DNA of 64,000 nucleotides from Ranitomeya imitator (Eukaryota). A program made the position numbers and the translations under genes. Below the pieces are notes generated by a model. That model saw only the letters and a list, made by a program, of their open reading frames with translations. It was not told the origin of the DNA and did not search any database. Numbering within the stretch: the stretch's first letter is position 1; each line of letters starts with the position of its first letter. The stretch lies in NCBI RefSeq assembly GCF_032444005.1, contig NC_091283.1, positions 39,990,001 to 40,054,000 of the forward strand, read 5' to 3'. Of the stretch, positions 1,096-49,066 are shown piece by piece.

Positions 1096-1181
1096 CTGTA
1101 AAACGGAGAGAGAAGCGATATAATTGGGTGAACAGAGACCCCCAGGTGAGGGCGGAAGCGGCACAGCGGGAGCTCGCTCAC

Positions 1182-1240
1182 CTGCCGATAGTCCTTGAAG
1201 TATTTGTATGTCCTTTTAATTTGCTGTAAAAATGGAGGAT
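1182..1240 (-). CDS. TIMM50: TIMM50 coding exon 5
   Basis: (D)[19 protein letters not shown]; 59 bp, phase compatible with neighbouring exons. Confidence 0.92.
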
Positions 1241-1722: not shown

Positions 1723-1744
1723 CGCTGTCAAACTCATCGGGGAT
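1723..1744 (-). CDS. TIMM50: TIMM50 coding exon 4 (22-bp micro-exon)
   Basis: tag|ATCCCCGATGAGTTTGACAGCG|gtgag = IPDEFDS, cf. human IPDEFDN. Confidence 0.9.
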
Positions 1745-3936: not shown

Positions 3937-4035
3937 CCAGGACACGCAGCCCCCCCCCAGGACACGCAGCCCACCCCCAGGACACGCAGCCGCCCCCCAG
4001 GACACGCAGCCGCCCCCCCAGGACACGCAGCCCAG
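3937..4035. repeat. Minisatellite, ~20-bp unit CAGGACACGCAGCCnCCCC, about 5 copies
   Basis: Direct tandem repeat visible in TIMM50 intron 3. Confidence 0.85.
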
Positions 4036-4939: not shown

Positions 4940-5850
4940 ACTGCACAAAACCACATTCAATAAGTGTATTAACCCTTCAGGTGCTTCACGAGAACTAAAG
5001 CAATGTGGAAGGAAAAACATTAACATTTAACTTTTTTTTCACAAAAAATGTACTACTTCACAACCAAACTTTTTCAAATGGACCACAAATTTGTTGTTGT
5101 GCAATTTATCCTGAGTACGCCGATACCCAGTATGTGGGGGCAAATCACTGTTTGGGCGCATGGCAAAGCTCAGAAGGGATGAAGCAACGCTTGACTTTTT
5201 GAACACAAAATTGGCTGGAATCGGGCGCTATGTCGCATTTGAAAACCTCCTGATGTACCTAAACAGTGGAAACCCTGCAACACAGCCCTAACCCCAACCA
5301 CAGCTCTAGCCCCTAACCCTAGCTTCAATCCGAACTGCAAAGAATGGGAAAAAAAATACAATTTTTTTTTAATTTTATTATTTTTAGCTAACTAAGGGGG
5401 TGATAAAAGGGGGGTTTGATTTACTATTTTTTTTATTTTGATTACTGTGATTGGGTCTATCACTGTGATCAAAATGAACGAATAGGAAGAATCTATTGTT
5501 CCCAGGTATTGGCCAGCAGATCTCAGCAGGCACACTGCGCATGTGCCCACCGTTTTCTTCCAAGAAGATGATGCAGAGGGCCGGGGGACAGAGCAGGAGG
5601 GTCCAGGGATGGAGGAGGTACCGAAAGAGGCTCGGGGACCCCATTTCTCTCTCCTCTGATATGAATGGAAAATCTGACTTTTTTTTGGAAATGGCGTTAT
5701 TCGGTGAATAACAGCGATCATGTGACTGGGGAAGAGACCCCAGAGATTTTCCAACAATGGTGGGCGCTATACACTTATTTCTTAGTGTCATCAAAAAGCG
5801 TCGCTGAGGAATAAGCACCCTTAACTGCCGGCGGTCGTTAGGGACAAATC
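4940..5850 (-). mobile_element. Degraded inverted relic of the same non-autonomous family as 11388-19919
   Basis: 5120-5190 is the reverse complement of the ~390-bp unit at 13780-13850; short CCCTAA-like tract at 5286-5322. Confidence 0.55.
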
Positions 5851-6190
5851 TAATTTTCGTTTTTTTTTTCTTTTCCTCCCCTTCTAAGAGCCGTAACCTC
5901 TATGTATTTATTTTTTTTAATATTCGGAGCAGACGAGTGTCGCCCGATTTTTACGCACATGTCTCCTAGAGAAGCCAACATTTCATCAGCCAAATACAAT
6001 AAATTCATGGCGTGACCCATCAGAATAGAATAGATATGTACATAGAATAGATAACTAGAAAGAGGTCAGTGACATATATAATTAGTATAGTCCGTGTGTA
6101 TTTTAATGTAAAATGTATTTAGCTAATAATTCAATAACTTAAAGAAAAAAAAAAAAAAAAAAATCAAGGACATGGGGGGGGGGGCACCCC

Positions 6191-7242
6191 TATAATTAAT
6201 AACCAGCAAAGGCTAGGCAGACAGCTGTCGGCTGATATTAAGGAAGGGGCTATGAACTTTCTCATGCTAGCAGTGATGTCAGTGAGGTGAACGGAGTACT
6301 TCGCCTATAATTCATATCACCCCGAGCCACTAATGCTGCGCAGCTCAGTGTCTTTGCTGGATGCCAGGCTGAAAGCTCGCATCATGCCAACGTTCAGCAG
6401 GACATCTAGATGTTGCAGAGCTAGACTTGTCGCGGGACACAATAGATTATCTTCTCGTTGGACCCGTGAGGAAAATTGTGTTTTATTTTTTTTTTTTTTT
6501 GTCTTTTTACAGGTGACATGGGCTTCAGTTTATTAGATGTAAAGGGGGGTATAACTTTTTTTTTTTATTATTTCAAATAAAAGGTGTCAGTTAGTGATGA
6601 GCGAGTATATTCGTGGCTCGAGATTTCCCGAGCACGCTCAGGGGGGTCTCCCGAGTATTTGTAAGTGTTCGGAGATTTAGTTTTTGTTGACGCCGCTGCA
6701 TGATTTACAGCTGCTAGCCAGCATAAGTACATGTGGGGGTTGTCTGGTTGCTAGGGAATCCCCACATGTAATCAAACTGGCTAATATCTGTAAATCATTC
6801 AGCTGCGGCGATGAAAACGAAATCTCCGAGCACTAAAAAATACTCGGGAGGACACCCGAGCGTGCTCGGGAAATCTCGAGTACCGAGTATATTCGCTCAT
6901 CACTAGTGTCAGTGTTTTTATTTCAATTAAAGGACTATATTGTGGGCGCTTGTTATTTACAATATGACTATGGGGTTAGTAATGGGGGCATCTTATAGAT
7001 GCCTCTCCAATACTAACACCTAGGTTTTATGTCAGCTGCCAACACAAAGCTGACATCAACCCCAATATTATTACCCCACTTGCCACCGCACCAGGGCAAG
7101 TGGGAAGAATGAGGCTATATGCCAGAATTGGCGCATCTTATGGGGTGGCAGAGAGCAGATGTTTTTAGTCTGGGAGGGGGAAAATAGCCTATTAATATCA
7201 GACAACAGCTGTCTGCCTAGCCTTCGCTGGTTATTAATTATA
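6191..7242. repeat. Pair of ~50-bp inverted repeats (6191-6241 and 7192-7242) of a dispersed element
   Basis: tataattaataaccagcaaaggctaggcagacagctg and its reverse complement; the same motif forms a hairpin at ~23300-23420. Confidence 0.6.
6594..6903. mobile_element. Fold-back MITE with ~130-bp imperfect inverted arms
   Basis: GTGATGAGCGAGTAT...ATATTCGCTCATCAC flanked by TA on both sides. Confidence 0.85.
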
Positions 7243-7496
7243 GGGGGGTGTTTCAAACAGTCAGACTGCCACTGATCTAAGAGTCATCAGCTGTGCTGTG
7301 GAGAGGTGATAACTTTTGTCTCACAGTTGGATGAAGTTATACTGGTCTTGTCAACAGCTGCTGGGTGGAAACCATCACAAGGAGGTGGGCACAGGAAAAA
7401 TCTACATTATGTTCCAACTTTATATTCTCAGAGGGAACTATCCCTTTAAATCCACAGTGCAGGTGTGTTTATGTATATTATATATAAACTTCTTAC

Positions 7497-7528
7497 CTTA
7501 TTTCCCTCCGGGTCTACCGCGCTGCTAC
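7497..7528 (-). CDS. TIMM50: TIMM50 coding exon 3 (32 bp)
   Basis: cag|...|gtaag; GSSAVDPEGNK, cf. human GNNPVDENGAK. Confidence 0.88.
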
Positions 7529-7610
7529 CTGCGTCCAGAACACAGATCATGTCAGAAGGACAAGAAAGGCAAAGTAACCCCCCAACCAGTGCACAACACA
7601 GGGTCCTCAC

Positions 7611-7755
7611 CAAATGTATACACCATAAAGCCGCTCCCCAACACGCCCATGACGCCGGCCGCCCGGAGGACAAATTTTTTAGCCCTGGCTTTGTTTTCCT
7701 TCTGTTTCTTCTGCTGTTCCTCCGTTTCAGGATTACTCTGGGGGTCTTCAGTGGC
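7611..7755 (-). CDS. TIMM50: TIMM50 coding exon 2 (includes transmembrane segment)
   Basis: ATEDPQSNPETEEQQKKQKENKARAKKFVLRAAGVMGVLGSGFMVYTF(G); 145 bp, cag/gtgag. Confidence 0.88.
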
Positions 7756-8055
7756 CTGTGGGTGGGAAAAATAAAGAAGTAATTAGTCCACAAGAGAAAC
7801 GTTATGAGAGGGTGAACGTATTGGGGGAGCATGGGACACAAAAGGCGGCATCAGTATGTGGATATGAGGGGGAGAAGCAGAAAGTGACGGCCACCACAGC
7901 ATCTGGGAGGAGGTGCAGATACTCAAACACAGACAGTGATGGCCGAAGGGCTGGAAAGAAAATGTAATAAGCAGCTGATTTGTGTCGGCTATAGGTTGAA
8001 GCGCGCAGAATATATCTTCCCAATAGACACAGGTCAGGTGCATGTCTCCTGTTGT

Positions 8056-8925
8056 GCACGCAGGACCCCAACCGGCACCCCGAGCTCCACACAGTGCACG
8101 CGCTCACCCGGCGCCCGAGCTCCTCACGATGCTCGCGCCCACCCGGCGACCCCGAGCGCCTCACGATGTGCGCGCCCACCCGGCGCCCCAAGCTCCTCAT
8201 GATGCGCGCGCCCACCCAGTGACCCCGAGCTCATCAAGATGTGCATGCCCACCCGGCGCCCCAAGCTCTTCACGATGTGCGCTCCCACCGGCGACCCCGA
8301 GCTCCTCACGATGCGAGCGCCCACCCGGCACCCCGAGCTCCTCACGCCCACCGGCGCCCCAAGCTCCTCATGATGCGCGCTCCCACCCGGCAACCCCGAG
8401 CTCCTCACGATGCGCGCGCCCACCCGGCGCCCCAAGCTCCTCATGATGCGCGTGCCCACCCGGCGACCCCGAGCTCATCAAGATGTGCAAGCCCACCCGG
8501 CGCCCCAAGCTCTTCACGATGTGCGCTCCCACCGGCGACCCCGAGCTCCTCACGATGCAAGCGCCCACCCGGCACCCCGAGCTCCTCATGATGCGCGCGC
8601 CCACCCGGCGACCCCGAGCTTCTCACGGTGTGCATGCCCACCCGGCGCCCCAAGCTCCTCACAATGCACGTGCCCACCCGGCGCCCCAAGCTCCTCACGA
8701 TGCGCGTGTCCACCAGGCGCCCCAAGCTCCTCACGATGCGCGTGCCCACCAGGCGCCCCAAGCTCCTCACAATGTGCATGCTCACCCGGCGCCCCAAGCT
8801 CCTCACGATGCGCGTGCCCACCAGGCGCTCCAAGCTCCTCACAATGCGTGTGCCCACCCGGCGCCCCAAGCTCCTCACGGTGCACGCGCCCACCCGGCCC
8901 CCCCCCCCCCCCCAAGCTCCACACG
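8056..8925. repeat. GC-rich minisatellite, ~34-35-bp unit (CCCACCCGGCGCCCCAAGCTCCTCACGATGCGCG), about 25 copies
   Basis: Tandem repeat in TIMM50 intron 1; source of many spurious ORFs. Confidence 0.92.
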
Positions 8926-9699
8926 AGAAGCTCTGAGAAATGACTCGGACCACCACAGACCTTCTGGCTCGGTGCAATGTTTCATGTTCACAACGGATAA
9001 TCAAGTGAAGAGCCACAGAGGCCGGGGAGGTAGGATTGTGACAGGGAATGTAGATTGTGAGCCCCATCGGGGACAGCGATGATAATGTGTGCTGCGAATA
9101 GGTTAGTGCTATATAAAAATCAAGATTGTTATTTTCCGAGACCGCCTGCAGCGGCTTGTTTTCTGTGATCACTATTTATGTTTTTTTTTTTTCTATGGAA
9201 TTGAGGTGACAAACACTCGTGAATTCTGGAGTTTGGCTTTTCTCTTTGCGGCGCTTACTGATCGGGTTAATTAATTTGATATTTAACAGCTCAGACTTTT
9301 ACGGGCGCGGCGATACTGAACAAAAAGATTTGTTTGTTTTTTACTATTTATAAACCAGCAAAACAGGGGACAACTTTAAATATTTTTTCCTCTGTTTTTT
9401 TTAAACCTGAGATCAGTAAGACCGCGGCCGCAGTGATGGGGGCTTCATCAGACCCCCTGGCTGCTGTGACATTGGCTCCTCGTGGTCGCGTCCTGGGGGT
9501 CCATGGGGGCGACACACCCCGCTCCATTGTCAGGAATGGTGCACAATATCCCAGGGAGAAAAGCAGCTGCCAGAAGGGGGAGTGCCGCTTATCCAGAGCG
9601 GGGGGCACATGACTATGGGGGGCCCAGCAGATAGAAGGGGCGTGTGCACACAGGGGAGGTCAGACAGGTGACAGGTCAGTGACAGGTGACAGCCCTCAC

Positions 9700-9852
9700 C
9701 TCCTTCTGCTGGCTCCGCAGCTTGTCCTGCAGCACAGCCCCGGTCAGACTCTCCCCCGGGCCGGTACTCAGCTGCCGGCATCTCAGCACGGCCCGGCTTG
9801 ACAAGAGTAACCGCACCGACCTCCCGCACGCAGGCACCAGCGAGGCCGCCAT
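9700..9852 (-). CDS. TIMM50: TIMM50 coding exon 1 (mitochondrial presequence)
   Basis: aagATGG start; MAASLVPACGRSVRLLLSSRAVLRCRQLSTGPGESLTGAVLQDKLRSQQKE is Arg/Ser/Leu-rich and followed by gtgag; frame joins exon 2. Confidence 0.88.
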
Positions 9853-9877
9853 CTTTCCTGGCACTGCGCACTGCCAG

Positions 9878-9965
9878 CCAATCCAAAGGAAGCCGGGGAC
9901 ATCCGGAACCAATCAGGACTTCGGAGAGCCAACGGCCAATAAAACGCCGAAAGAGAGCAGCCAAT
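9878..9965. promoter_or_regulatory. TIMM50 promoter: four CCAAT boxes in a GC-rich region
   Basis: CCAAT at 9878, 9909, 9936 and 9961, spaced 25-31 bp, immediately upstream of the start codon. Confidence 0.65.
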
Positions 9966-34321: not shown

Positions 34322-36611
34322 TTTTGGCTTCCTGTACTGTTATGAAAGGCAATTCAGAATCACAATGGACATGGAGGTCAGAGCACATACAGTGAACTGA
34401 CAATAACCCAAAATAATAGAACGAGCTCTGAGACGTGGGAACTCTGCAGACCGCAATCCCTAAGCCTATCAAACCACACTAAAGGTAGCCGTGGAGCGCT
34501 CCTGACCAGAACCTAGGCGCCTCGTCACAGCCTGAGAAACTAGCTAATCCTGAAGATAGAAAAATAAGCCTACCTTGCCTCAGAGAAATTCCCCAAAGGA
34601 AAAGGCAGCCCCCCACATATAATGACTGTGAGTAAGATGAAAACACAAACATAGAGATGAAACAGATTTAGCAAAGTGAGGCCCGACTAGCTGAACAGAA
34701 CGAGGATAGGGAAGATAACTTTGCGGTCAGCACAAAAACCTATAAAAAACCACGCAGAGGGGACAAAAAGACCCTCCGCACCGACTAACAGTATGGAGGT
34801 GGTCCCTCTGCGTCTCAGAGCTTCCAGCAGGCGAGAAAAACCAATAAAGCAAGCTGGACAGAAAAATAGCAACAAAATAACATAAGCAAAACTTAGCTTT
34901 GCAGAGCAGCAAGCCACAGGAATGATCCAGGGAAAAAACAAGTCCCACACTGAAACATTGACAGGAAGCATAGATCAAAGCATCAGGTGGAGTTAAGTAG
35001 AGAAGAAGCTAACGAGCTCACCAGATCACCTGAGGGAGGAAACTCAGAAGCTGCAGTACCACTTTCCTCCACAAACGGAAGATCCCAGAGAGAATCAGCC
35101 GAAGTACCACTTGTGACCACAGGAGTGAACTCTGCCACAGAATTCACAACAGTTATCACGTTGGACAGGTGAGGAATATGGTTGTTTATTTATTTTTTTG
35201 CAGGGGAAAAGTGCTTCAGCTGAATATTGTTGTTTATTTTTTTACAAGGGACATGTGCTTCAGCAGCGTCATCTTTGAGGAGGATTTTTTTCTCTTCTCC
35301 AGGAAGATGGCGCCGGCAGCGCATGCACAGTAGCAGCTCTCAGATCACAGCTATAGACACCGATAGCTGCCACTACCCAGGCGCGGCGGGATCCATTTTC
35401 AATTTTTTTTTTCCGTAGCTGGATAACATCAAGAAAATGTATTATTGGCACACTAACCACGTCATTATGCTGCAGAGCAGGTGCCACGGCTGACGCCTGC
35501 CTGCAGAAGCGTTTTTTGTCTCTTTTTTCAGTATGTTAGGTATTTATTATGCAAACTAGGGGGCAGGTCAGTGAGGGATCAGTTTCAAAAAACTGACCGT
35601 CACATCCAAACATAGACTAAGTGTGAACAGGTGCTTAACCTAGAGTCACCAACTCATATACAGTCAAATAAATAAGGCAGCACACTGCGGCGCTAAAACA
35701 TGCAAACATGAAAATTGAACTGCATTACTGCGCTAGAAATATGAAAAAATGAGAGCGTTTCGTGCATAAAGTGTAGGACCTGGTATACGAAAGGACCTGG
35801 TATAAGAGAGATGCCCTAATGTGGCTACCAGGTACACATGAATTGGCCATTTTATGCGCTAAACGCAGTTTTTTGAAATTTGTATTCACTAGCCTTCTGA
35901 CTGAGCACTCCGCCTCTTAGCCACAGGTGTTTTAATCGCAGCAGGTCCATTACCCCTCCACAGAGAGAGAGAAATTTAGTCTCAGAAGAGGTTTCACAGG
36001 TACCCATTCAGATGAAGACGTTGTGTAGGACCTGGTATACGAGAGATGCCTTAATGTGGCTACCAGGTACACATGAATTGACCAATTTAAGAGGTAAAAG
36101 CTCTCATTTTTCATATTTCTAGTGCAGTGGTGCAGTTCAATTTTCATGTTTCATGTTTGCATCTTTTAGCGCCGCAGTGTGCTGCCTTATTTATTTGACA
36201 GTGAGGGATCAGTGACCTGTCAGCAGTCTGCAGTATGAATATATAATCAGAGCACCACATACCCCGGCCCCACCTTAGGGCGCGAGAATCTCATTATTTA
36301 CAAACTGAAAATAAAGATTAAGAAACAACCACAAGACGGATTTCATTAATCCAGGTATCATTTTAATCAGTATAACGGTGCCGACCTGACACTGTCTGTA
36401 GGTTACTATGAACAATCCTGCTGACAGGATCCCTTTAAGTGTTTTTTTTTTGCAGCCTTTTGATTGGATGGTACAAAGTTCGGAGCCTTTTCGATGTGGA
36501 GCTGCTTCAAAGAAGTGAGAACTTTTCTTTTCCCTCTGATTCGGTGATTTTCACAACCTGAAGAGGAAGAAAAACGGCTTTGCAATAGAAAGGAATAAGA
36601 AGAGTCTTTAA

Positions 36612-36972
36612 GGCTACGTTCACATTAGCGTTACGCTAATGTGCGTCGCTGTTGCGTCGGCGACGCAGCGGCGATGCAGCGGTGACGCGCCCCTATGTTT
36701 AACATAGGGGACGCGTGCGTTTTTTTGTTTGCGTTTTTCGACATGTGCGTCGTTTTCTTGTTTGCGTTTTTCGACATGTGCGTCGTTTTCGACGCTAGCG
36801 TCGGACGCACGAAAATGCAACAAGTTGCATTTTTCGTGCGTCCGATTTTCGTCAAAAAACGACGCACGCGTCGCAAAACGCAGCGTTTTTGCGCGCGTTT
36901 TTGGTGCGTCGCGCGTTGCGTCGCCGTTGCGTCGCCGACGCACCGGCGCGCAACGCTAATGTGAACGTAGCC
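36612..36972. mobile_element. PIF/Harbinger-type MITE
   Basis: taa|GGCTACGTTCACATTAGCG...CGCTAATGTGAACGTAGCC|taa; long palindrome. Confidence 0.88.
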
Positions 36973-38545: not shown

Positions 38546-38635
38546 TTAGTTCCCATGAGCCCAACACGCAACGTCTTGCACCAATAATGGGATGAGGCCG
38601 AGTAACACTGCGTCCTGGAGACATTGTGAAGATTC
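38546..38635 (-). CDS. IFNL: IFN-lambda copy A coding exon 5
   Basis: tag|ESSQCLQDAVLLGLIPLLVQDVACWAHGN*; resembles mammalian ESPGCLEASVTFNLFRLL..DLNCVA. Confidence 0.85.
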   Translation of the reverse strand, partial: ESSQCLQDAVLLGLIPLLVQDVACWAHGN

Positions 38636-39265
38636 CTACAAAAGAATGACATCATGAGAATCCCTCATTTATTTTGCATATTCAAGGTCACAGCCAAGGC
38701 CAGCTCCATGTATATGCGGATCTTGGGTGGTAGAGTCACTTTCTGTCCCTAAGTTTCCTCCTGATAATCAAGCATTGAACATTTCTTCTCACCATGGGCC
38801 ACAAAGCCCAGTGGGCTCTGTTATTAACCCACCTTCCCCTGTAGAGTAGACCATATACTGATGGGTGTAATGGTCTCCAAAGTGGGGTGTGCATCAAAAC
38901 AATAGTACAATAGTTCCCTTGCAACCTCTTGGACCCACTAGACCCACATTGGATACCATCCTCCTCCAGCTGGCACCTCTGAGGGTTGGTGGTGCTAATG
39001 CACTCCCAGTGTCCAATGATGTCTAGTGCCAGCGTAAACTAGCTGGACATTGGAATCATCCATCCTTATGTCTACTACCTTCAACTTCTCCCTTCTACTT
39101 TACCAAGACTGTAGATGTCTATCCCGCTGTCCACCATTGCCATGCTGCCTTCAATTATCTGTCCTACATCTCTCCTCTGGACACTGCGCCTTCTAGATAT
39201 TACATTCATTATATTCCACTTAGTTTGAGACAAGAACATTCACAATTCTTGTGCAGGACACTTAC

Positions 39266-39346
39266 CACGTCCTTAAAGTGCTGAAGATGGTGAAACCAAG
39301 CCTTCAACTCATCGGAGGGAGTCTCACTGATTTCTGATGACTCTTT
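39266..39346 (-). CDS. IFNL: IFN-lambda copy A coding exon 4
   Basis: cag|KESSEISETPSDELKAWFHHLQHFKDV|gtaag. Confidence 0.82.
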
Positions 39347-39428
39347 CTGCCAGACAGAAGATGATGATAAGTGATGGATGATATGTCTAGTACAAACAAA
39401 CTAGGAAGAACAGGAAATTGGAACTTAC

Positions 39429-39572
39429 ACAGATCGTGAGATCATCTCTCAGTTTAAGGAAGATCATAAGAGACTGGGATCCGACATCTGTAGCACCAGA
39501 CGTGGACTTGCTCTGCAGGACATCAAGTGCTTGTGACACTCGATCCAAGATGAAGATGAGACGATCACTGGG
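39429..39572 (-). CDS. IFNL: IFN-lambda copy A coding exon 3
   Basis: aag|PSDRLIFILDRVSQALDVLQSKSTSGATDVGSQSLMIFLKLRDDLTIC|gtaag. Confidence 0.82.
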
Positions 39573-39664
39573 CTTTGGAGAAGATTAGAGTGTCACCTGG
39601 TTATTTTGGGGTTTCAGGTGGTGTTGGGGGGTCAGTAAGAGGAGCAAGACTGCTATGTACTTAC

Positions 39665-39742
39665 CATTAGGTCACACACAGATGGCTTGTGTCTCATCAT
39701 TCTTCTGTAGCATTTGATGGCAGTGGTGGACATGTCCTTCTC
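39665..39742 (-). CDS. IFNL: IFN-lambda copy A coding exon 2
   Basis: cag|EKDMSTTAIKCYRRMMRHKPSVCDLM|gtaag. Confidence 0.83.
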
Positions 39743-40022
39743 CTGTGGAAAAAGCAGGATTTTGTTTTTAGCTTTTCAGCATATAATATATTCAGTAGTA
39801 GAGACATCATTTAGAATATCTACTATATAGTTTATTATCCAGAGGGAGTGGAATGTCAGGAACCGACGCTCAATGCTTCAAGGCATCGGTGAATGGAAGC
39901 AGCTATTACTAAAGCCACCATGTAATACATAGTGTAGAAGATTTGGATCGGTTCCTGATTTTGGCGCCACCTGGACATCCATGATTTGACTCCTCTCTAT
40001 ATAACACATCCTCTCTCCTTAC

Positions 40023-40166
40023 ATGTTCATTCTGCAGTTGTCGGATCACCCTGATATCAGCGGACGATACTGATTGATATCTGGACATCGGGCAGCGTCT
40101 CTGGTGTGGAAGTCCGGTCACTGCCACAACTACAAGACTGAAGACGACCACCAGTCTGACGTCCAT
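40023..40166 (-). CDS. IFNL: IFN-lambda copy A coding exon 1 (signal peptide); 178-aa protein in total
   Basis: gccATGG; MDVRLVVVFSLVVVAVTGLPHQRRCPMSRYQSVSSADIRVIRQLQNEH|gtaag; cf. GCHIAQFKSLSPQEL in mammalian IFNL. Confidence 0.85.
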
Positions 40167-40379
40167 GGCTGGAGAATTGGTGTCGATTTGGAGTTTTTCT
40201 CTTCCTATGAACCTGGGTATAAGAATTTAATACATAAAACCTGATTATTATCCATCGTGTAAATGTCCTCAGCACTGATATATTCTGTATGTACACCCAG
40301 TAGAAGATGCTCACCTGCCCGGTCGTCTTTCTTCTCTCTGCGGCTCGTAGCTCTGTCTCATGTCTACCCATGTTTCGTC

Positions 40380-40540
40380 TTTTATATTTCAATCTCCAGG
40401 AGAAAAAATTCTTCATTTTCAGAATGTGCAGATATTTTCTATGTACGTCCAGAATACAAGTGACAGCAGACAAGTGACAGCAGCCATGGGAACCTACCGC
40501 TTTCTGTTTCCCTGCTGTACAGGTGAGAAGAAGACGTCAC
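40380..40540 (-). promoter_or_regulatory. IFN-lambda A promoter (TATA, GAAACAGAAA IRF site, CRE-like site)
   Basis: TATAAAA 40380-40386; GAAACAGAAA 40501-40510; TGACGTCT 40532-40539. Confidence 0.65.
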
Positions 40541-40794
40541 GTCGCTGGGAGGAGACTCGTACAGGTGAAGCATCTGCACAAGAATCCTCCCGGTGCTGCA
40601 TGAAAGAAAGGGTTAATTGTGATGGTTTCGTCTCTCCGGTTAATGTTCAGAATGTTCTGTTCAGAGCAGGGACGAGGATCTGCAAGGACTTTTTGTAGGA
40701 AGAAATTGTACTTAGAGAACGTACTTACTGATTAGATGTTCACTGAGTATTCCCGACTGTCGAGTGCACCTGAGGCTATCTTAGGTGCAGGGAG

Positions 40795-42389
40795 GTAGCC
40801 CATCCACCCAAAAGTAGCCCATCCACCCAAAAGTAGCCCATCCACCCAAAAGTAGCCCATCCACCCAAAAGTAGCGCATCCACACAAAAGTAGCCCACCT
40901 ACACAAAAGTAGTCCACCCACCTAAAAGTAGCCCATCCATGCAAAAGTAGCCCACCTACACAAAAGTAGCCCATCCACCCAAAAGTAGCCCATCCACCCA
41001 AAAGTAGCCCATCCACCCAAAAGTAGCGCATCCACACAAAAGTAGCCCACCTACACAAAAGGAGTCCACCCACCTAAAAGTAGCCCATCCATGCAAAAGT
41101 AGCCCACCTACACAAAAGTAGCCCATCCACAGAAAAGTAGCCCATCTACACAAAAGTAGTCCACCCACCTAAAAGTAGCCCATCCATGTAAAAGTACCCC
41201 ATCTACACAAAAGCAGCCTATCCACAGAAAAGTAGCCAATCTATGCAAAAGTAGCCCATCCAAGCAAAAGTAGCCCATCCAAGCAAAAGTAGCCCATCCA
41301 CAGAAAAGTAGCCCATCCACAGAAAAGTAGCCAATCTATGCAAAAGTAGCCCATCTACACAAAAGTAGTCCACCCACCTAAAAGTAGCCCATCCATGTAA
41401 AAGTACCCCATCTACACAAAAGCAGCCTATCCACAGAAAAGTAGCCAATCTATGCAAAAGTAGCCCATCCAAGCAAAAGTAGCCCATCCAAGCAAAAGTA
41501 GCCCATCCACAGAAAAGTAGCCCATCCACAGAAAAGTAGCCAATCTATGCAAAAGTAGCCCATCCACGCAAAAGTAGCCCATCCACAGAAAAGTAGCCCA
41601 TCCACAGAAAAGTAGCCCATCCACAGAAAAGTAGCCAATCTATGCAAAAGTAGCCCATCCACGCAAAAGTAGCCCATCCACAGAAAAGTAGCCCATCCAC
41701 AGAAAAGTAGCCCATCCACAGAAAAGTAGCCAATCTATGCAAAAGTAGCCCATCCACGCAAAAGTAGCCCATCCACAGAAAAGTAGCCCATCCACAGAAA
41801 AGTAGCCAATCTATGCAAAAGTAGCCCATCCACGCAAAAGTAGCCCATCCACAGAAAAGTAGCCCATCCACAGAAAAGTAGCCAATCTATGCAAAAGTAG
41901 CCCATCCACGCAAAAGTAGCCCATCCACAGAAAAGTAGCCCATCCACAGAAAAGTAGCCAATCTATGCAAAAGTAGCCCATCCACAGAAAAGTAGCCAAT
42001 CTATGCAAAAGTAGCCCATCCACGCAAAAGTAGCCCATCCATGCAAAAGTAGCCCATCCACAGAAAAGTAGCCCATCCATGCAAAAGTACCCCATCCACA
42101 GAAAAGTACCCCATCCATGCAAAAGTACCCCATCCACACAAAAGTAGCCCATCCACACAAAAGTAGCCCATCCACACAAAAGTAGCCCATCCATGCAAAA
42201 GTACCCCATCTACACAAAAGCAGCCTATCCACAGAAAAGTAGCCAATCTACGCAAAAGTAGCCCATCCACAGAAAAGTAGCCAATCTACGCAAAAGTAGC
42301 CCATCCACGCAAAAGTAGCCCATCCACAGAAAAGTAGCCAATCTATGCAAAAGTAGCCCATCTACACAAAATTAGCCCATCTACCCAAA
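40795..42389. repeat. 19-bp minisatellite AAAAGTAGCCCATCCACnn, about 84 copies
   Basis: Tandem array with recurring variant blocks. Confidence 0.95.
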
Positions 42390-43897
42390 GCAATATGGTG
42401 TGTACAGGAGACAACGCCCACAGTGGGTATAAGCCAGAAGTAGGCTAATCTCATCCACTGGATATGTCAACACAAAAAAACTTAAAGGGTTTTTTGATTT
42501 CCGAAAATCCCTGTTCCCTCCTCTGTAGTTTGTTAAAAAAAAAATAGACAGCACTTTACTCACCCTCACCGGGTCCAGCGCCGAGTCTCCACCACTGCTA
42601 CCGATGTTATTGTTCGCAGTCGACGTGACGTCAGTGCTGTAGACAATAAAAGACCCAGAGAGCAGCGGAGGAGACTCAGCTCTGGACCAGGGGAGGGTGA
42701 GTAAAGTGCTGTGTGTTTTTAAATAATCTGCAGCCGGGTGGACAGAAGTTTTTCTAAAAATGGGAAACATCTTTAGGGTATGTGCTCTTTCTGGCAGATT
42801 CGCCTAATAAAGTACTTAGCGTTCCAAATAATGAACGTTATGCACAGCAATGTCAAAAACGACTTGCTGCGCACATGTTCCATCTTTTGTAACGCTGTGA
42901 AATGGCTAAAATGGCGACTATTCCCATTCTTCACGCGGCTTCTGCTTACGAACAAAAAGACAGCAAAGAAGAAGCCTATGGAAAATACCGCCGGCATAGC
43001 CGTAATGATTACTCAGCCTCTTTGCATTTTCTAGATAATTATCTTTTGCACTTAACACATACTTTCTTAAAAATGACCCATCTCTTGCCATAAAATACTC
43101 GGTTTTCCTGATTCCGGCGATGTTTTTCTTGTGTTCCTGCCCCTCTCCGTTCCTGAGATATGGCCTCCTCTTCCCTGTATATAAATCTAACCTTTTTAGC
43201 CAACTGGGCGTGTTCCTCAACTTTTCTTTGTGACCATTTTGAAGAATTTGCCAAGCAGACGTCACCATGTCTTGCCTCACCCACTCTTATGGAGCTAATC
43301 AGGACTGGGGCAAAAAAAAAAAAAAGTTGCAGACATTTTGCGCAATTTCAGGCTGTTTTATGGCAGATTCCTGGAATATTCTCCTCTATGAATCGGCTCT
43401 GGATTTATTTGCATTTCCATCAGATAAAACAATGACGTATTTCTGACGAGTGACAGGTCGTGGAAGTGTCCACTTGGCGGATAACTGTGAATCTTTATTT
43501 CTGGAGGCGCTTGGTTCTCATTATGGAAATCCAGATACAAATCAGGCAATGCTTCATGGGAAAAATGTATGCAAATTAGCTGCCCTCCAGAAAGAAGAAT
43601 GTTCTCTCCCTCCTGCCCCCTAGCAGAAAGTCAGTGTGGAGCACCCTCAGGGCAAAATCTGCTCAGACACCGATCTACTGTTTAGGTGAAGTTTTTATGT
43701 GAAATGTTTTTTTAAATGATTGTTTATTATTTTTATTTTCATATAATAATCTCTGGTTACTTTCCAGGAAGCAAAAGAAAGTGCTGATCCTACGGAGATG
43801 TATAGAAATATGTTCTAGGATTACTCTGACCCGGGAGGAGGTGAGCTGTGACATCAGCTATTGTGGATGGTGGATCCTGTGTGATCTACTGTATATA

Positions 43898-45433
43898 ACA
43901 TAGTAACATAGTAACATAGTAACATAGTTAGTAAGGCCGAAAAAAGACATTTGTCCATCCAGTTCAGCCTATATTCCATCATAATAAATACCCAGATCTA
44001 CGTCCTTCTACAGAACCTAATAATTGTATGATACAATATTGTTCTGCTCCAGGAAGACATCCAGGCCTCTCTTGAACCCCTCGACTGAGTTCGCCATCAC
44101 CACCTCCTCAGGCAAGCAATTCCAGATTCTCACTGCCCTAACAGTAAAGAATCCTCTTCTATGTTGGTGGAAAAACCTTCTCTCCTCCAGACGCAAAGAA
44201 TGCCCCCTTGTGCCCGTCACCTTCCTTGGTATAAACAGATCCTCAGCGAGATATTTGTATTGTCCCCTTATATACTTATACATGGTTATTAGATCGCCCC
44301 TCAGTCGTCTTTTTTCTAGACTAAATAATCCTAATTTCGCTAATCTATCTGGGTATTGTAGTTCTCCCATCCCCTTTATTAATTTTGTTGCCCTCCTTTG
44401 TACTCTCTCTAGTTCCATTATATCCTTCCTGAGCACCGGTGCCCAAAACTGGACACAGTACTCCATGTGCGGTCTAACTAGGGATTTGTACAGAGGCAGT
44501 ATAATGCTCTCATCATGTGTATCCAGACCTCTTTTAATGCACCCCATGATCCTGTTTGCCTTGGCAGCTGCTGCCTGGCACTGGCTGCTCCAGGTAAGTT
44601 TATCATTAACTAGGATCCCCAAGTCCTTCTCCCTGTCAGATTTACCCAGTGGTTTCCCGTTCAGTGTGTAATGGTGATATTGATTCCTTCTTCCCATGTG
44701 TATAACCTTACATTTATCATTGATAAACCTCATCTGCCACCTTTCAGCCCAAGTTTCCAACTTATCCAGATCCATCTGTAGCAGAATACTATCTTCTCTT
44801 GTATTAACTGCTTTACATAGTTTTGTATCATCTGCAAATATCGATATTTTACTGTGTAAACCTTCTACCAGATCATTAATGAATATGTTGAAGAGAACAG
44901 GTCCCAATACTGACCCCTGCGGTACCCCACTGGTCACAGCGACCCAGTTAGAGACTATACCATTTATAACCACCCTCTGCTTTCTATCACTAAGCCAGTT
45001 ACTAACCCATTTACACACATTTTCCCCCAGACCAAGCATTCTCATTTTGTGTACCAACCTCTTGTGCGGCACGGTATCAAACGCTTTGGAAAAATCGAGA
45101 TATACCACGTCCAATGACTCACCGTGGTCCAGCCTATAGCTTACCTCTTCATAAAAACTGATTAGATTGGTTTGACAGGAGCGATTTCTCATAAACCCAT
45201 GCTGATATGGAGTTAAACAGTTATTCTCATTGAGATAATCCAGAATAACATCCCTCAGAAACCCTTCAAATATTTTACCAACAATAGAGGTTAGACTTAC
45301 TGGCCTATAATTTCCAGGTTCACTTTTAGAGCCCTTTTTGAATATTGGCACCACATTTGCTATGCGCCAGTCCTGCGGAACAGACCCCGTCGCTATAGAG
45401 TCACTAAAAATAAGAAATAATGGTTTATCTATT
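43898..45433 (-). mobile_element. 5'-truncated CR1-type LINE inserted in the 90-bp tandem repeat
   Basis: RT 44017-45354 (YLDFSKAFD, GVPQGSVLGP, FADD); (CTATGTTA)n tail; nearly identical to 61073-62601. Confidence 0.93.
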
Positions 45434-45905
45434 ATATAGAGGTGTTATCAGTCATTGTACAGGAGGAGGAGGAGGTGAGCTGTGACATCACCTATTGTGA
45501 ATGGTGGATCCTGTGTTATCTACTGTATATAGAGGAGTTATCAGTCATTGTACAGGAGGAGGAGGTGAGCTGTGACATCACCTATTGTGAATGGTGGATC
45601 CTGTGTTATCTACTGTATATAGAGGTGTTATCAGTCATTGTACAGGAGGAGGAGGTGAGCTGTGACATCACCTATTGTGAATGGTGGATCCTGTGTTATC
45701 TGCTGTATATAGAGGTGTTATCAGTCATTGTACAGGAGGAGGAGGTGAGCTGTGACATCACCTATTGTGAATGGTGGATCCTGTGTTATCTGCTGTATAT
45801 AGAGGTGATATCAGTCATTGTACAGGAGGAGGAGGTGAGCTGTGACATCACCTATTGTGAATGGTGGATCCTGTGTTATCTACTGTATATAGAGGTGTTA
45901 TGAGT
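45434..45905. repeat. 90-bp tandem repeat, about 5 copies (further partial copy 43830-43897)
   Basis: gaggtgagctgtgacatcacctattgtgaatggtggatcc unit. Confidence 0.92.
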
Positions 45906-46069
45906 CATTGTACTCTTGTCTATGATAATAGATAATAATAACACTGCTGCATTGTCATCTGTACAGAACTGAATGTGTAAGTCTATTATAATGCCAAGTG
46001 ACCCGGGTTCTGGTTTAGGCAATACCCTTCGTTGTGGCACAAGGCTTGTTGCAGCCTCAATAACGTTCA

Positions 46070-46434
46070 GGGTATGTGCAGAGGATCGGGAACTGGCAGC
46101 GCTTTGGACACAGCGCATGTTCGCTGCCGACTATTGAACGCAGATGAATCTCCATGTGATCACTGACCTGTGCGGAGTCACCGTGTCCAGTACATTGCAT
46201 ACAGGTGAAATGTATGTTGCGGAGGCTTGCGTTCCTCAAGAGAAATTGACATGCCGTGGTCTGGAGAGACGCCCGTTTCTGCGGGTAAGCGGTGGGCATC
46301 TGTGGACGCAGAGTGGACATAGGATTTCTGAATATCCCATCCACTATGCTTTAACATCTGGACACTGCAGGTTGGACGCTGCACAAGTACACAGCGTCCA
46401 TCCCGCAGCGTTTACTGATCGTCTGCACATACCC
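46070..46434. mobile_element. Harbinger-type MITE
   Basis: tca|GGGTATGTGCAGA...TCTGCACATACCC|tta. Confidence 0.7.
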
Positions 46435-46891
46435 TTAGGGTAGCCATCTCTAATAGGCGGCACTAGAAGTTGGACTAGAAGTTGCATTTCGTGTCAGATG
46501 TTGGATTGCTGGAATAACTGGTTACCAAGAAGAAAAGAATAACAGAGTGATCGGCTTTCAGGTTCTGGCAAGCTTTCTTATAACGCTACTGCAGATGTGG
46601 GGAGGGGGATTATAAAGGCAGCACAGTTGTCCAGCAGAACAATCTGCAAAAATAGTGAGAAAATCCCACACGTTACACGCAACAGAACCAGCGCGTCATA
46701 TGAAAAATCAGATGTGTTGGAATGGGATGGATTCGATGGACGTAGTTACTCCATGTGACGGGGGATCCTGGTTACATACAGATATCACATACAGTATGGA
46801 GGTAGTGACTGAGTGATGGTGGACCCTGGTTACATCTCTGTATATCGCAGGGATTCCTCCTGTCACCTGTACGAGTCTCCTCCCAGCGACG

Positions 46892-47037
46892 TGACGTCTT
46901 CTTCTCACCTGTACAGCAGGGAAACAGAAAGCGGTAGGTTCCCATGGCTGCTGTCACTTGTATTCTGGACGTACATAGAATATATCTGCACATCCTGAAA
47001 ATGAAGAATTTTCTCTTCTGGAGATTGAGATATAAAA
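46892..47037 (+). promoter_or_regulatory. IFN-lambda B promoter (CRE-like, IRF/ISRE-like, weak kB-like, TATA)
   Basis: TGACGTCT 46892; GAAACAGAAA 46921; GGTAGGTTCCC 46933; GAAAATGAAG 46997; TATAAAA 47031. Confidence 0.65.
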
Positions 47038-47248
47038 GACGAAACATGGGTAGACATGAGACAGAGCTACGAGTCGCAGAGAGAAGAAAGACGACCGGGC
47101 AGGTGAGCATCTTCTACTGGGTGTACATACAGAATATCAGCGCTGAGGACATTTACACGATGGATAATAATCAGGTTTTATGTATTAAATTCTTATACCC
47201 AGGTTCATAGGAAGAGAAAAACTCCAAATCGACACCAATTCTCCAGCC

Positions 47249-47392
47249 ATGGACGTCAGACTGGTGGTCGTCTTCACTCTTGTTCTTGTGGCAGTGACCG
47301 GACTTCCACACCAGAGACGCTGCCCGATGTCCAGATATCAATCAGTATCGTCCGCTGATATCAGGGTGATCCGACAACTGCAGAATGAACAT
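47249..47392 (+). CDS. IFNL: IFN-lambda copy B coding exon 1 (signal peptide); 178-179-aa protein in total
   Basis: MDVRLVVVFTLVLVAVTGLPHQRRCPMSRYQSVSSADIRVIRQLQNEH|gtaag. Confidence 0.86.
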
Positions 47393-47685
47393 GTAAGGAG
47401 AGAGGATGTGTTATATAGAGAGGAGTCAAATCGTGTGTGTACAGGTGGTGCCAAAATCAGGAATCGATCAATGGATCTTCTCCACTATGTATTATGTGGT
47501 GGCTCTCGTAACAGCTGCTTCCATTGACCGATGCCTTGAAGCATTGAATGTTGGTTCCTGACATTTCAGTCCCGATGGATAATAGACTATACAGTAGATA
47601 TTCTGGATGACGTCTCTTTCACTGAACATATAATATACGTTCGGTGCTTAAAAGCTACAACAAATACTTCTCTATCTGTCCACAG

Positions 47686-47763
47686 GAGAAGGACATGTCC
47701 ACCAGTGCCATCAAATGCTACAGAAATATGATGAGACACAAGCCGTCTGTATGTGACCTAATG
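47686..47763 (+). CDS. IFNL: IFN-lambda copy B coding exon 2
   Basis: cag|EKDMSTSAIKCYRNMMRHKPSVCDLM|gtaag. Confidence 0.85.
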
Positions 47764-47855
47764 GTAAGTGCATAGTGGTCTCGTTCCTATTACTGACCCC
47801 CAACTCCACCAGAGACCCAAGAAATAACCATGTGACCCTCTAATCTTCTCCACAG

Positions 47856-47999
47856 CCCAGTGATCGTCTCATCTTGATCTTGGAACGAGTGTCACAAACA
47901 CTTGATGTCCTGCAGAGCAAGTCCACATCTGGTGCTACAGATGTCGGACCCCAGTCCCTCATGATCTTCCATAAACTGAGAGATGATCTCATGATTTGT
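47856..47999 (+). CDS. IFNL: IFN-lambda copy B coding exon 3
   Basis: cag|PSDRLILILERVSQTLDVLQSKSTSGATDVGPQSLMIFHKLRDDLMIC|gtaag. Confidence 0.85.
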
Positions 48000-48081
48000 G
48001 TAAGTTCCCATGTCCAATTCTTCCTAGAGTGTATGTATGAGACATTTCACCCATCACTTATCATCGTCCTTTTCTGTCCAG

Positions 48082-48165
48082 CAGAAAGAGTCAACAGGAA
48101 TCAGTGAGACTCCGTCCGAGGAGCTGAAGCCTTGGCTGCACCATCTCCAGCACTTTAAGGACTTG
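48082..48165 (+). CDS. IFNL: IFN-lambda copy B coding exon 4 (CAGCAG acceptor; start 48082 or 48085)
   Basis: (Q)KESTGISETPSEELKPWLHHLQHFKDL|gtaag; cf. RLHHWLHRLQE in mammalian IFNL. Confidence 0.84.
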
Positions 48166-48569
48166 GTAAGTGTCCTGCATGAGAAATGTGGATGTTCCAT
48201 TTTTATTATGATAAAGATTTATGCACTCGGGCAATATCAAATCCAGAAGATATGGGTTTCCGAGAAGAGCTAGAAGCCAATTGATTGATGGAGAAGGTAG
48301 CATGGAACTCTTTGAGAGTCAGGTGGTTTTCTAGTTTTAGTGGAGTAGATAAGAGGCACGAGCGGAAATGCTTGTCTGTAATTGCCATTAGGTTGCACAT
48401 ATTGATGATTACTAATACAAATATTTTCCCATGTAAATTGGGTTAAAAATACTGTATGTTCTAATGACGATAAGAGAACTTCTCATCATGGAGTTGGTGT
48501 GGTATGAAGATTAGGAGAATTTTCATGACTTCAATTTGCATTATAAAAGTTTTTTAAATTATTTTGTAG

Positions 48570-48659
48570 GCATCTCCACAATGTCTCCAGGATGCTGTGT
48601 TACTCGGACTCATCCCAATACTGGTGGAGGACGTTGGGTGTTGGGTTCATGGGCAGTAA
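48570..48659 (+). CDS. IFNL: IFN-lambda copy B coding exon 5
   Basis: tag|ASPQCLQDAVLLGLIPILVEDVGCWVHGQ*. Confidence 0.86.
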   Translation, partial: ASPQCLQDAVLLGLIPILVEDVGCWVHGQ

Positions 48660-48959
48660 CTTAAAAAGAAGTTTAAAAGAAGATCCACAAGTTTAGAGGA
48701 TGCTCTTCAATTTCCGAATTTGAAGTCATGGTCCATCTTCCCTGAACATCACAAAGTCTATTATCTTCATCCTGTAATTTATGACCACCATCATTGGAAG
48801 AAGAAGGAGAAAGAGAAGAGTCATTCTCCATGTGTCAGGAAGTCCACACAGAAGAAGCTTCTCTAAAACTTCCTGAGATCCATCTATATTTTCTGGATAT
48901 TCTAGGAGAATCAAGGAACTAATGTTTTTCACTTCCCCCTGCACAAATATGACAATGCT

Positions 48960-49066
48960 ATTTCTATTTTATATATTTATTGCATATTTGCTTATTATAT
49001 TGATATTATTTATTGCTTTGAAATGGATTTATTTGAATGTCTGTTTTTCGGAAATACTAAAATAAA
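48960..49066 (+). promoter_or_regulatory. AU-rich 3' UTR and AATAAA signal of IFN-lambda B
   Basis: Several ATTTA pentamers; AATAAA at 49061-49066. Confidence 0.6.

What the first reader, a model, noticed from the sequence alone, without database searches (positions are those of the whole stretch)
38546..48659. Two intact, head-to-head intron-containing IFN-lambda paralogs linked to TIMM50, largely invisible in the ORF track
Seen: splicing five phase-0 exons gives 178-179-aa secreted proteins with six Cys and IFN-lambda-like helices on both strands. Established: a five-coding-exon, phase-0 layout is typical of type III IFN/IL-10-family genes, and human IFNL genes and TIMM50 both lie in 19q13.2. 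Inference: this is an amphibian type III IFN cluster, probably poorly annotated, with two functional paralogs (23 substitutions plus a possible 1-aa indel, about 87% identity).
Basis: partly seen in the sequence, partly recalled or inferred. Interest (0 to 1): 0.75.

Follow-up and report, generated by a model that had tools for sequence, protein, structure and literature searches.

The report
Two frog interferon-lambda genes, head-to-head

Summary
Gene A is on the minus strand at 40166-38546 and gene B on the plus strand at 47249-48659. Each has five GT..AG, phase-0 coding exons, encodes 178 aa and has six Cys. The two differ at 23 residues (87.1% identity).

They are type III interferons:
- Four exons of gene B and three of gene A hit only Pfam IL28A, colinearly.
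- The matching public full-length models score 122-125 bits, against a cutoff of 27.
- The only significant solved relatives by sequence are human IFN-lambda3 and lambda1.
- The top eight matches to the AlphaFold model are all human IFN-lambdas.

TIMM50 exons lie at 344-1164 on the minus strand.

The genome is Ranitomeya imitator. Both genes are already RefSeq models: XP_069610563.1 "interferon lambda-3-like" and XP_069610564.1 "uncharacterized protein". "Poorly annotated" therefore holds only for gene B's name.

- The duplication predates the Ranitomeya/Dendrobates split.
- Both copies are under purifying selection (omega 0.18-0.29 between orthologues).
- The promoter plus exon 1 has been homogenised between the copies (98% identity, against 83-89% downstream).
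- One spliced public contig confirms junctions 2-3, 3-4 and 4-5 of gene B and the 179-aa NAGNAG form. It replaces exon 1 with a leader 11 kb upstream.
- The exon 1-2 junction and inducibility remain untested.

The scan had already noted other IFN-lambda genes elsewhere on this chromosome.

The parts
38546..40166 (-). IFN-lambda gene A (RefSeq XP_069610563.1, 'interferon lambda-3-like'). Five coding exons: 40166-40023, 39742-39665, 39572-39429, 39346-39266, 38635-38546 (stop included). 178 aa from the conserved MDVRL start.
   Evidence: exons, GT..AG, phase 0. (IL28A hits per exon). (P0057 contains exactly these exons; IL28A 124-125 bits).
47249..48659 (+). IFN-lambda gene B (RefSeq XP_069610564.1, 'uncharacterized protein'). 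Five coding exons: 47249-47392, 47686-47763, 47856-47999, 48085 (alt 48082)-48165, 48570-48659. 178 or 179 aa.
   Evidence: (P0036 is 100% identical to all five exons). (IL28A 122 bits). (spliced contig confirms junctions 47763|47856, 47999|48082, 48165|48570).
48082..48084 (+). NAGNAG tandem acceptor of gene B exon 4. The upstream AG adds one Gln (179-aa form).
   Evidence: sequence ccAGcAG. (the contig joins 47999 to 48082). (R. variabilis B also has cagcag; gene A and D. tinctorius have tggcag).
46863..47248 (+). Shared 5' flank of gene B: a conserved promoter or 5' leader. It holds the IRF-type site GAAACAGAAA at -328, TATTAAA at -66, and the annotated extra coding exon 47056-47102 with its 100-nt intron 47103-47202.
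   Evidence: 95-98% identical to gene A's flank. (94% mean identity across four frog genes)..
40167..40568 (-). Shared 5' flank of gene A, the mirror copy. It holds the IRF-type site at -344, TATTAAA at -66, and the annotated extra coding exon 40361-40315 with intron 40314-40213.
   Evidence: (the annotated CDS starts at 40361).
48660..48993 (+). 3' UTR of gene B as far as the transcript contig reaches. ATTTA motifs lie at 48777 and 48975 inside that reach, and at 49008 and 49027 just beyond it.
   Evidence: the contig runs to 48993..
36378..36612 (+). Non-coding leader joined to gene B exon 2 in the only transcript contig. Only its last 30 nt (36581-36610) were located directly. The start is inferred from the 233-nt length. 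It ends at the left inverted end of a MITE, and the apparent donor is AG|GC.
   Evidence: 233 loose letters before 47684. (unique exact match at 36581-36610)..
344..9912 (-). TIMM50, 5' part of the gene. Exons lie inside ORFs 344-616 and 943-1164. A probable first exon with a presequence-like start lies in ORF 9676-9912, in a GC-rich stretch.
   Evidence: Pfam NIF. (the only PDB hits are yeast Tim50, colinear). (GC 0.61 at 8-10 kb). The first exon is by inspection only.

Best explanation
These are two intact paralogous interferon-lambda (type III IFN) genes of Ranitomeya imitator. They are arranged head-to-head about 7 kb apart and lie about 29 kb from the 5' end of TIMM50.

Inferred mode of action, by homology with Xenopus and mammalian IFN-lambdas: each gene makes a pre-protein of about 178 aa with an N-terminal signal peptide. 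The mature product is a helical class II cytokine held by conserved cysteines. It is secreted after virus sensing, probably through IRF-type sites in the shared promoter. It signals through IFNLR1/IL10RB to induce antiviral genes.

The pair arose by an inverted duplication before the Ranitomeya/Dendrobates/Phyllobates split. Both copies have been kept by purifying selection. The promoter plus exon 1 has since been homogenised between them by gene conversion.

Shown here: gene structure, family membership, fold, synteny, age and constraint of the duplication, and three of gene B's four splice junctions.
Inferred: secretion, inducibility, receptor use and antiviral activity.
For: - Structure.
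- Family, exon by exon: the exons hit Pfam IL28A only, colinear along the profile (1-27, 55-101, 109-127, 130-157).
- Family, full length: public models P0036 and P0057, identical to the exon sets, score 122-125 bits over the whole profile.
- PDB by sequence: apart from one chance-level hit (E 0.31), the only hits are human IFN-lambda3 and lambda1, with 3HHC at E 4.9e-11. Five of the six Cys align to human Cys.
- Fold: AlphaFold2 pLDDT 85.6. Foldseek top 8 are all human IFN-lambda3/1/4, TM about 0.8. IL-20 and IL-22 reach 0.65-0.69 and type I IFNs about 0.5.
- Relatives: 52 anuran proteins, 39 of them named interferon lambda-like and others named interleukin 28B, type III interferon or Interferon, including Xenopus tropicalis interleukin 28B gene 1. 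The six Cys are invariant in 38 of them.
- Synteny: TIMM50 in the window. Type III IFN loci are linked to SYCN/SUPT5H (PMC8863823).
- Age: tree. Head-to-head order is kept in R. variabilis.
- Constraint: omega is 0.43 for A versus B, 0.18 for the B orthologues and 0.29 for A versus D. tinctorius.
- Gene conversion: the 5' 540 bp is 98.1% identical between A and B, against 96% between orthologues. Downstream, A versus B is 83-89% while orthologues are 93-98%.
- Transcription: a 965-nt spliced contig, 100% identical to gene B.
Against: - No transcript evidence for gene A.
- None for exon 1 or the exon 1-2 junction of either gene.
- The one gene B contig carries a different, non-coding leader instead of exon 1.
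- The RefSeq model of the R. variabilis B orthologue also starts inside exon 2.
- No induced RNA-seq could be examined.
- There is no signal-peptide predictor among the tools.
- No strict NF-kB consensus lies in the shared promoter.
- Public models add a 31-aa N-terminal extension, which would bury the signal peptide if it were real.
Confidence: 0.9

Rival explanations
1. The genes encode a different class II helical cytokine that merely shares the five-exon, phase-0 layout: an intron-containing type I IFN, type IV IFN-upsilon, or an IL-10-family member.
For: The five-coding-exon, phase-0 layout is common to all these families (PMC8863823), so gene structure alone does not discriminate.
Against: Pfam gives IL28A only. 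The PDB sequence search gives IFN-lambda only. In the fold search, IFN-lambdas take the first eight places, well ahead of IL-20/22 and type I IFNs. IFN-upsilon sits between ADARB2 and PFKP, not near TIMM50/SUPT5H (PMC8863823).
Confidence: 0.02
2. Gene B, or both genes, is mainly made as an exon-1-less transcript. It is therefore either a non-productive, decaying gene or the source of a signal-less isoform, not a normal secreted IFN-lambda.
For: The only contig found joins a leader ending at 36612 to exon 2 and skips exon 1. The RefSeq model of the R. variabilis B orthologue (P0058, 127 aa) starts at the Met in exon 2. Exon-1-less IFN-lambda models also exist in Bufo, Aquarana and Anomaloglossus.
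Against: - Exon 1 is intact in both Ranitomeya B genes.
- The B lineage has omega 0.18.
- Exon 1 encodes helix A and the first conserved Cys, so a product without it would lack the first Pfam IL28A positions.
- The leader has an in-frame stop and several short upstream ORFs (read from the sequence).
- Its donor is a weak AG|GC at the end of a MITE that D. tinctorius lacks. The leader was not found within 10 kb of the R. variabilis gene.
- The run is probably unstimulated tissue, where the normal IFN mRNA is not expected.
Confidence: 0.1
3. The annotated 209-aa proteins are the true products. Translation would start at 47056/40361 in an extra 5' exon, giving a 31-aa hydrophilic extension in front of the hydrophobic segment.
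For: RefSeq and an independent ENA annotation of an older assembly both predict it. The 100-102-nt intron has a GTGAGC donor and a CCCAG acceptor in both genes and in R. variabilis A (P0041).
Against: - The extension is read in a different frame in another R. imitator paralogue (P0025) and in other frogs, so it is not conserved as protein.
- The supposed intron is as conserved as the supposed exon, as expected of a promoter.
- TATTAAA lies at -66 from the MDVRL ATG.
- That ATG has an optimal context, CCAGCCATGG, whereas the upstream ATG has GTAGACATGA and is preceded by three more ATGs.
- Most anuran models are 177 aa and start at MDVRL/MDIRL.
Confidence: 0.12

Closest known systems
Xenopus intron-containing type III interferons (X. 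tropicalis 'interleukin 28B (interferon lambda 3), gene 1'; X. laevis IFNL1-9)
   Same: The protein is about 179 aa and contains the Pfam IL28A domain. The Xenopus sequences are 47-51% identical to gene B. In Xenopus these genes are induced by poly(I:C) and virus (PMC4928184).
   Different: They belong to a different anuran lineage: the pipid clade is the outgroup in the tree. Expression and activity of the poison-frog genes are untested.
Human IFN-lambda3/IL-28B and IFN-lambda1/IL-29 (PDB 3HHC, 5T5W, 9BPV, 3OG6)
   Same: Same Pfam family and same fold, TM about 0.8. Five of the six frog Cys align with human Cys. The gene family lies in the same chromosomal neighbourhood as TIMM50/SUPT5H (PMC8863823; human 19q13.2 from my own knowledge).
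   Different: Only about 21% identity in the structural alignment. The frog proteins have six invariant Cys, one of them (VCDL in exon 2) without a human partner in the alignment. Receptor use is not tested.
Orthologues in other dendrobatids (R. variabilis XP_077137649.1 and XP_077148619.1; D. tinctorius XP_073404782.1; P. terribilis P0039)
   Same: Same gene pair. The A orthologues are 93-97% identical in DNA and the B orthologues 93.5-97.7%. The head-to-head order is kept in R. variabilis.
   Different: The spacer is about 37 kb in R. variabilis against 7 kb here. No B-type gene was found within 10 kb of the D. tinctorius A gene.
Rainbow trout intracellular type I interferons made by alternative splicing (PMC3828176)
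   Same: Transcripts of an intron-containing IFN gene that lack the signal-peptide exon.
   Different: Those are type I IFNs with shown activity. Here there is a single contig whose leader is non-coding, and the predicted product also lacks helix A. This is a resemblance only.

Membership tests
Type III interferon (IFN-lambda; Pfam PF15177 IL28A) | Sequence matches the IL28A profile above the curated cutoff over its full length | tested here: met
   P0036 and P0057, identical to the exon sets, score 122-125 bits against a cutoff of 27, over profile positions 1-157. Single exons hit IL28A only, in colinear order.
Type III interferon (IFN-lambda; Pfam PF15177 IL28A) | Closest solved relatives by sequence and by fold are IFN-lambdas, not IL-10-family or type I IFNs | tested here: met
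   By sequence, the only significant hits are IFN-lambda3 and lambda1, E 4.9e-11 to 1.4e-6. Foldseek ranks 1-8 are IFN-lambda3/1/4 with TM about 0.8. IL-20/22 reach 0.65-0.69 and type I about 0.5. Model pLDDT is 85.6.
Type III interferon (IFN-lambda; Pfam PF15177 IL28A) | Five coding exons with all introns in phase 0 | tested here: met
   Three junctions of gene B are confirmed by a spliced contig. The feature is shared with other class II cytokines, so it is necessary but not sufficient.
Type III interferon (IFN-lambda; Pfam PF15177 IL28A) | N-terminal signal peptide; secreted protein | not testable with these tools
   By inspection only: MDVR is followed by 12 hydrophobic residues, then TG-LP. 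The Pfam domain starts at residue 22. There is no signal-peptide predictor, and public models place 31 aa in front of this start.
Type III interferon (IFN-lambda; Pfam PF15177 IL28A) | Conserved cysteine framework | tested here: met
   The six Cys are invariant in 38 anuran IFN-lambdas. Five align to Cys of human IFN-lambda3. Disulfide pairing was not tested.
Type III interferon (IFN-lambda; Pfam PF15177 IL28A) | Genomic neighbourhood of the type III IFN loci (SYCN / SUPT5H region) | tested here: inconclusive
   TIMM50 is in the window. That TIMM50 neighbours SUPT5H in human is my own knowledge. SUPT5H and SYCN themselves are not in the window. The locus description comes from PMC8863823.
Type III interferon (IFN-lambda; Pfam PF15177 IL28A) | Induction by virus or dsRNA, and signalling through IFNLR1/IL10RB to ISGs | not testable with these tools
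   There is only a conserved IRF-type element, GAAACAGAAA, in all four promoters compared; 2% of shuffles contain one. No induced RNA run was available.

The most novel reading that the evidence does not exclude
Gene B is expressed constitutively as an exon-1-less mRNA. The transcript starts in a leader 11 kb upstream, runs across gene A on the opposite strand, and is spliced from a donor created by a lineage-specific MITE into exon 2. It would yield either a signal-less intracellular IFN-lambda fragment or a regulatory transcript antisense to gene A. That would make it a type III counterpart of the trout intracellular interferons.
Probability: 0.07. Interest if true: 0.5.

Novelty: already known. 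Interest (0 to 1): 0.2.

Why it matters
This adds little beyond the public record. Multi-gene, intron-containing IFN-lambda families are established in frogs, and both genes are already RefSeq models.

The practical value is curation:
- Gene B deserves the name interferon lambda-like.
- The 31-aa N-terminal extension of both models is probably spurious.
- The pair is an old, conserved, head-to-head duplicate with a homogenised promoter and first exon.

That makes it a tidy case for studying gene conversion and co-regulation in amphibian antiviral genes, which bears on ranavirus and chytrid susceptibility in dendrobatids.

Tried and rejected
- **Exon 3 against PDB sequences:** no hit, even at E 10. 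A 48-aa exon is too short.
- **Word-index protein search on single exons:** not attempted, because its length window (0.55-1.75x) excludes full-length relatives. I used the exhaustive representative search with exon 3 instead. It gave four true IFN-lambda hits and two repeat-protein false hits (P0002, P0006).
- **TIMM50 ORF 344-616 against PDB:** nothing at the default threshold. At E 10 only weak Tim50 hits appeared. The neighbouring ORF settled it.
- **Runs X2-X4:** X2 laid nothing. X3 and X4 covered only exon 2, at about 89%, with unlike flanks, so they come from other paralogues.
- **Leader in other species:** not found within 10 kb of the R. variabilis B gene.
- **Promoter motifs:** no strict NF-kB or full ISRE consensus in the R. 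imitator promoters.
- **'Exon 0' as a conserved alternative coding exon:** considered because Bufo model P0004 begins with a homologous peptide. I rejected it as unproven. The frame differs between paralogues and the adjacent 'intron' is equally conserved.
- **Joining of exons:** Exon searches were by reference. All full-length work used the database proteins P0036 and P0057 by id.
Full report
**Observation**

The mechanical ORF list shows two near-identical ORFs that begin MDVRLVVVF. One lies on the minus strand (39909-40166) and one on the plus strand (47249-47527). An inverted-repeat search shows eight arm pairs, 82-98% complementary, linking 38496-40568 with 46863-48709.

Reading both strands and translating exon by exon gives the following gene models.
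- Gene B (+): 47249-47392, 47686-47763, 47856-47999, 48085-48165, 48570-48659.
- Gene A (-): 40166-40023, 39742-39665, 39572-39429, 39346-39266, 38635-38546.

Every intron is GT..AG and every exon length is a multiple of three. The parts add to 178 aa with six Cys in each gene. The two differ at 23 residues (87.1% identity) and at 41 of 537 nt.

Gene B alone has a tandem acceptor (ccAGcAG) before exon 4. tblastn of the exons finds no third copy in the window. The window contains no N.

**Identity, exon by exon**

- Exons 1, 3, 4 and 5 of gene B and exons 1, 3 and 5 of gene A hit Pfam IL28A; for exons 3-5 it is the only hit, and exon 1 also gives two weaker, chance-level hits (E about 0.1-0.2).
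- The hits fall in colinear order along the profile: 1-27, 55-101, 109-127, 130-157.
- Each single hit is below the 27-bit cutoff, at 14-24 bits.

Single exons are too short for the word-index search, whose length window would exclude full-length relatives. I therefore spent the one exhaustive representative search on exon 3 of gene B. It returned four frog proteins that all carry IL28A at 76-131 bits, plus two repeat-protein false positives.

**Identity, full length**

A word search seeded with the Bufo bufo protein returned 52 anuran relatives. NCBI names 39 of them 'interferon lambda-2/3(-like)'; others are named interleukin 28B, type III interferon or Interferon, and the rest are uncharacterized, hypothetical or unnamed. 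They include Xenopus tropicalis 'interleukin 28B (interferon, lambda 3), gene 1'.

One of them, P0036, is 100% identical to all five gene B exons. Its 90% cluster and a neighbouring cluster identified the two public models.
- P0036 is XP_069610564.1, 'uncharacterized protein [Ranitomeya imitator]'.
- P0057 is XP_069610563.1, 'interferon lambda-3-like [Ranitomeya imitator]'. It contains exactly the gene A exons.

A contig look-up places both genes in GCA_032444005.1, chromosome record CM064360.1. The window corresponds to positions 40,000,001-40,064,000.

These database proteins, used by id, gave the decisive tests.
- IL28A scores 122-125 bits over the whole profile.
- The PDB sequence search returns only human IFN-lambda3 and IFN-lambda1 at meaningful E-values, with 3HHC at 4.9e-11. 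Five of the six frog Cys align to human Cys.
- The AlphaFold2 model has pLDDT 85.6 and pTM 0.79.
- Its first eight Foldseek matches are human IFN-lambda3, lambda1 and lambda4 at TM about 0.8. IL-20 and IL-22 reach 0.65-0.69 and type I IFNs about 0.5.
- The six Cys are invariant across 38 anuran IFN-lambdas.

Type IV IFN is excluded by family and by locus, since it lies between ADARB2 and PFKP (PMC8863823).

**Neighbourhood**

- Two successive minus-strand ORFs, 943-1164 and 344-616, hit only yeast Tim50 in the PDB. They cover consecutive residues 10-52 and 51-82. The second also hits Pfam NIF.
- A presequence-like ORF at 9676-9912 sits in a GC-rich stretch.
- TIMM50 therefore runs on the minus strand from before the window start to about 9.9 kb, roughly 29 kb from gene A's stop codon.
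- Type III IFN loci are described as linked to SYCN/SUPT5H (PMC8863823). That SUPT5H neighbours TIMM50 in human is my own knowledge.
- The DNA between the genes and around them is transposon and satellite sequence.

**History and constraint**

In a maximum-likelihood tree of 40 anuran IFN-lambdas, genes A and B fall in a dendrobatoid-specific clade with 100/100 support. Gene B plus its R. variabilis orthologue is sister to (P. terribilis, (D. tinctorius, (R. imitator A, R. variabilis A))). So the duplication predates the split of these genera, with support of 94/89 and 91/68.

Synonymous distance over exons 2-5 agrees: 0.20 for A versus B, against 0.145 for A versus the D. tinctorius orthologue.

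Both lineages are under purifying selection.
- omega is 0.18 for the B orthologues.
- omega is 0.29 for A versus D. tinctorius.
- omega is 0.43 for A versus B.

The head-to-head order is kept in R. variabilis, where the spacer is about 37 kb instead of 7 kb.

The gene is a mosaic.
- From intron 1 onward, sequences group by gene. Orthologues are 93-98% identical and A versus B is 82-89%.
- In the 400 nt upstream plus exon 1, A and B of R. imitator are 98.1% identical. That is more than either is to its own orthologue (96%).
- This indicates gene conversion of the promoter and first exon within the inverted repeat.

The shared flank is 94% identical across four genes of three species. It carries an IRF-type GAAACAGAAA at about -330/-345 in all four and TATTAAA at -66/-69.

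**Transcripts**

One run search and one read-laying run were allowed. A single run of the same species label holds a 965-nt contig that is 100% identical to gene B. It is spliced at 47763|47856, 47999|48082 and 48165|48570 and continues to 48993.
- Three of the four predicted junctions are therefore confirmed.
- The upstream NAGNAG acceptor is used, giving the 179-aa form.
- The 3' UTR is at least 334 nt and holds two ATTTA motifs, with two more just downstream of the contig's end.

The 233 nt before exon 2 are not exon 1. Their last 30 nt match uniquely at 36581-36610 on the plus strand. That is 11 kb upstream, beyond gene A.
- The junction has a 2-nt ambiguity, and with the normal acceptor the donor reads AG|GC.
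- The donor lies exactly at the left inverted end of a 363-bp MITE at 36611-36973. D. tinctorius lacks this MITE.
- From the sequence, the leader has an in-frame stop and short upstream ORFs.
- The R. variabilis RefSeq model for gene B also starts at the Met inside exon 2 (P0058), although exon 1 is intact in its DNA.

I read this as a minor or non-productive transcript seen in unstimulated tissue. The consequence stands all the same: the exon 1-2 junction, all of gene A's junctions and inducibility are untested.

**Annotation detail**

Both public models are 209 aa. They start at an upstream ATG (47056 or 40361), use a 100-102-nt GT..AG intron, and read into the MDVRL start. I doubt this extension for five reasons.
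- Another R. imitator paralogue and other frogs use a different frame of the same stretch.
- The 'intron' is as conserved as the 'exon'.
- A TATA-like box lies inside the supposed intron.
- The MDVRL ATG has an optimal context, and three further ATGs lie upstream of the annotated one.
- Most anuran models are 177 aa.

**Verdict**

The genes are ordinary members of a known, already annotated family. Earlier notes of this scan had found other IFN-lambda genes 2.8 Mb away on the same chromosome. I found a further tandem pair at 50.09 Mb.

Noticed in passing
window 36611-36973: A 363-bp MITE with 60-nt terminal inverted repeats (AGGCTACGTTCACATTAGCG...). It is absent from the orthologous D. tinctorius locus. 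Its left end supplies the apparent GC donor of the leader that is joined to gene B exon 2.
   Followed up: partly
window 40795-42389 and 45425-45913: Two satellite arrays lie between the two genes. One has a 19-nt unit in about 84 copies and the other a 90-nt unit in 5.4 copies. The 90-nt array is about three times longer in R. variabilis (L002 1-1617).
   Followed up: partly
window 44017-45354 (-) and 60490-62487 (+): A truncated LINE-type reverse-transcriptase ORF (Pfam RVT_1) sits in the spacer between the IFN-lambda genes. Its translation appears identical, by eye, to that of a longer 665-aa copy near the window end, so it is a recent insertion.
   Followed up: no
P0059 (CAJ0930683.1, older R. 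imitator assembly), exon 4 of gene B: The older assembly's model reads WLHPHLQHF where this window has WLHHLQHF. This one-residue insertion is either a polymorphism or an assembly error.
   Followed up: no
L005 (CM064360.1 50,083,916-50,105,569): A further tandem pair of IFN-lambda genes (203 and 177 aa) lies 10 Mb away on the same chromosome. It belongs to the other anuran IFN-lambda clade in the tree.
   Followed up: partly
window 47693-47762 (runs X3, X4): Contigs from two other runs match only exon 2, at about 89%, and continue into unlike sequence on both sides. They are presumably transcripts of other IFN-lambda paralogues.
   Followed up: no
window 8040-8950: A GC-rich tandem repeat (reads as PRAPHDARAHPA.. 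or GAPGGHAHREEL.., depending on strand) lies inside the first intron or 5' region of TIMM50. It accounts for the GC peak of 0.61.
   Followed up: no
P0004 (Bufo bufo XP_040262304.1), P0005 (Aquarana catesbeiana XP_073456983.1), P0053/P0054 (Anomaloglossus): Several public frog IFN-lambda models lack the signal-peptide exon. The Bufo model starts with a peptide homologous to an ORF in the promoter region here (47001-47102, ending at a phase-0 CAG|GTGAGC donor). It is unclear whether these are real isoforms or prediction artefacts.
   Followed up: partly
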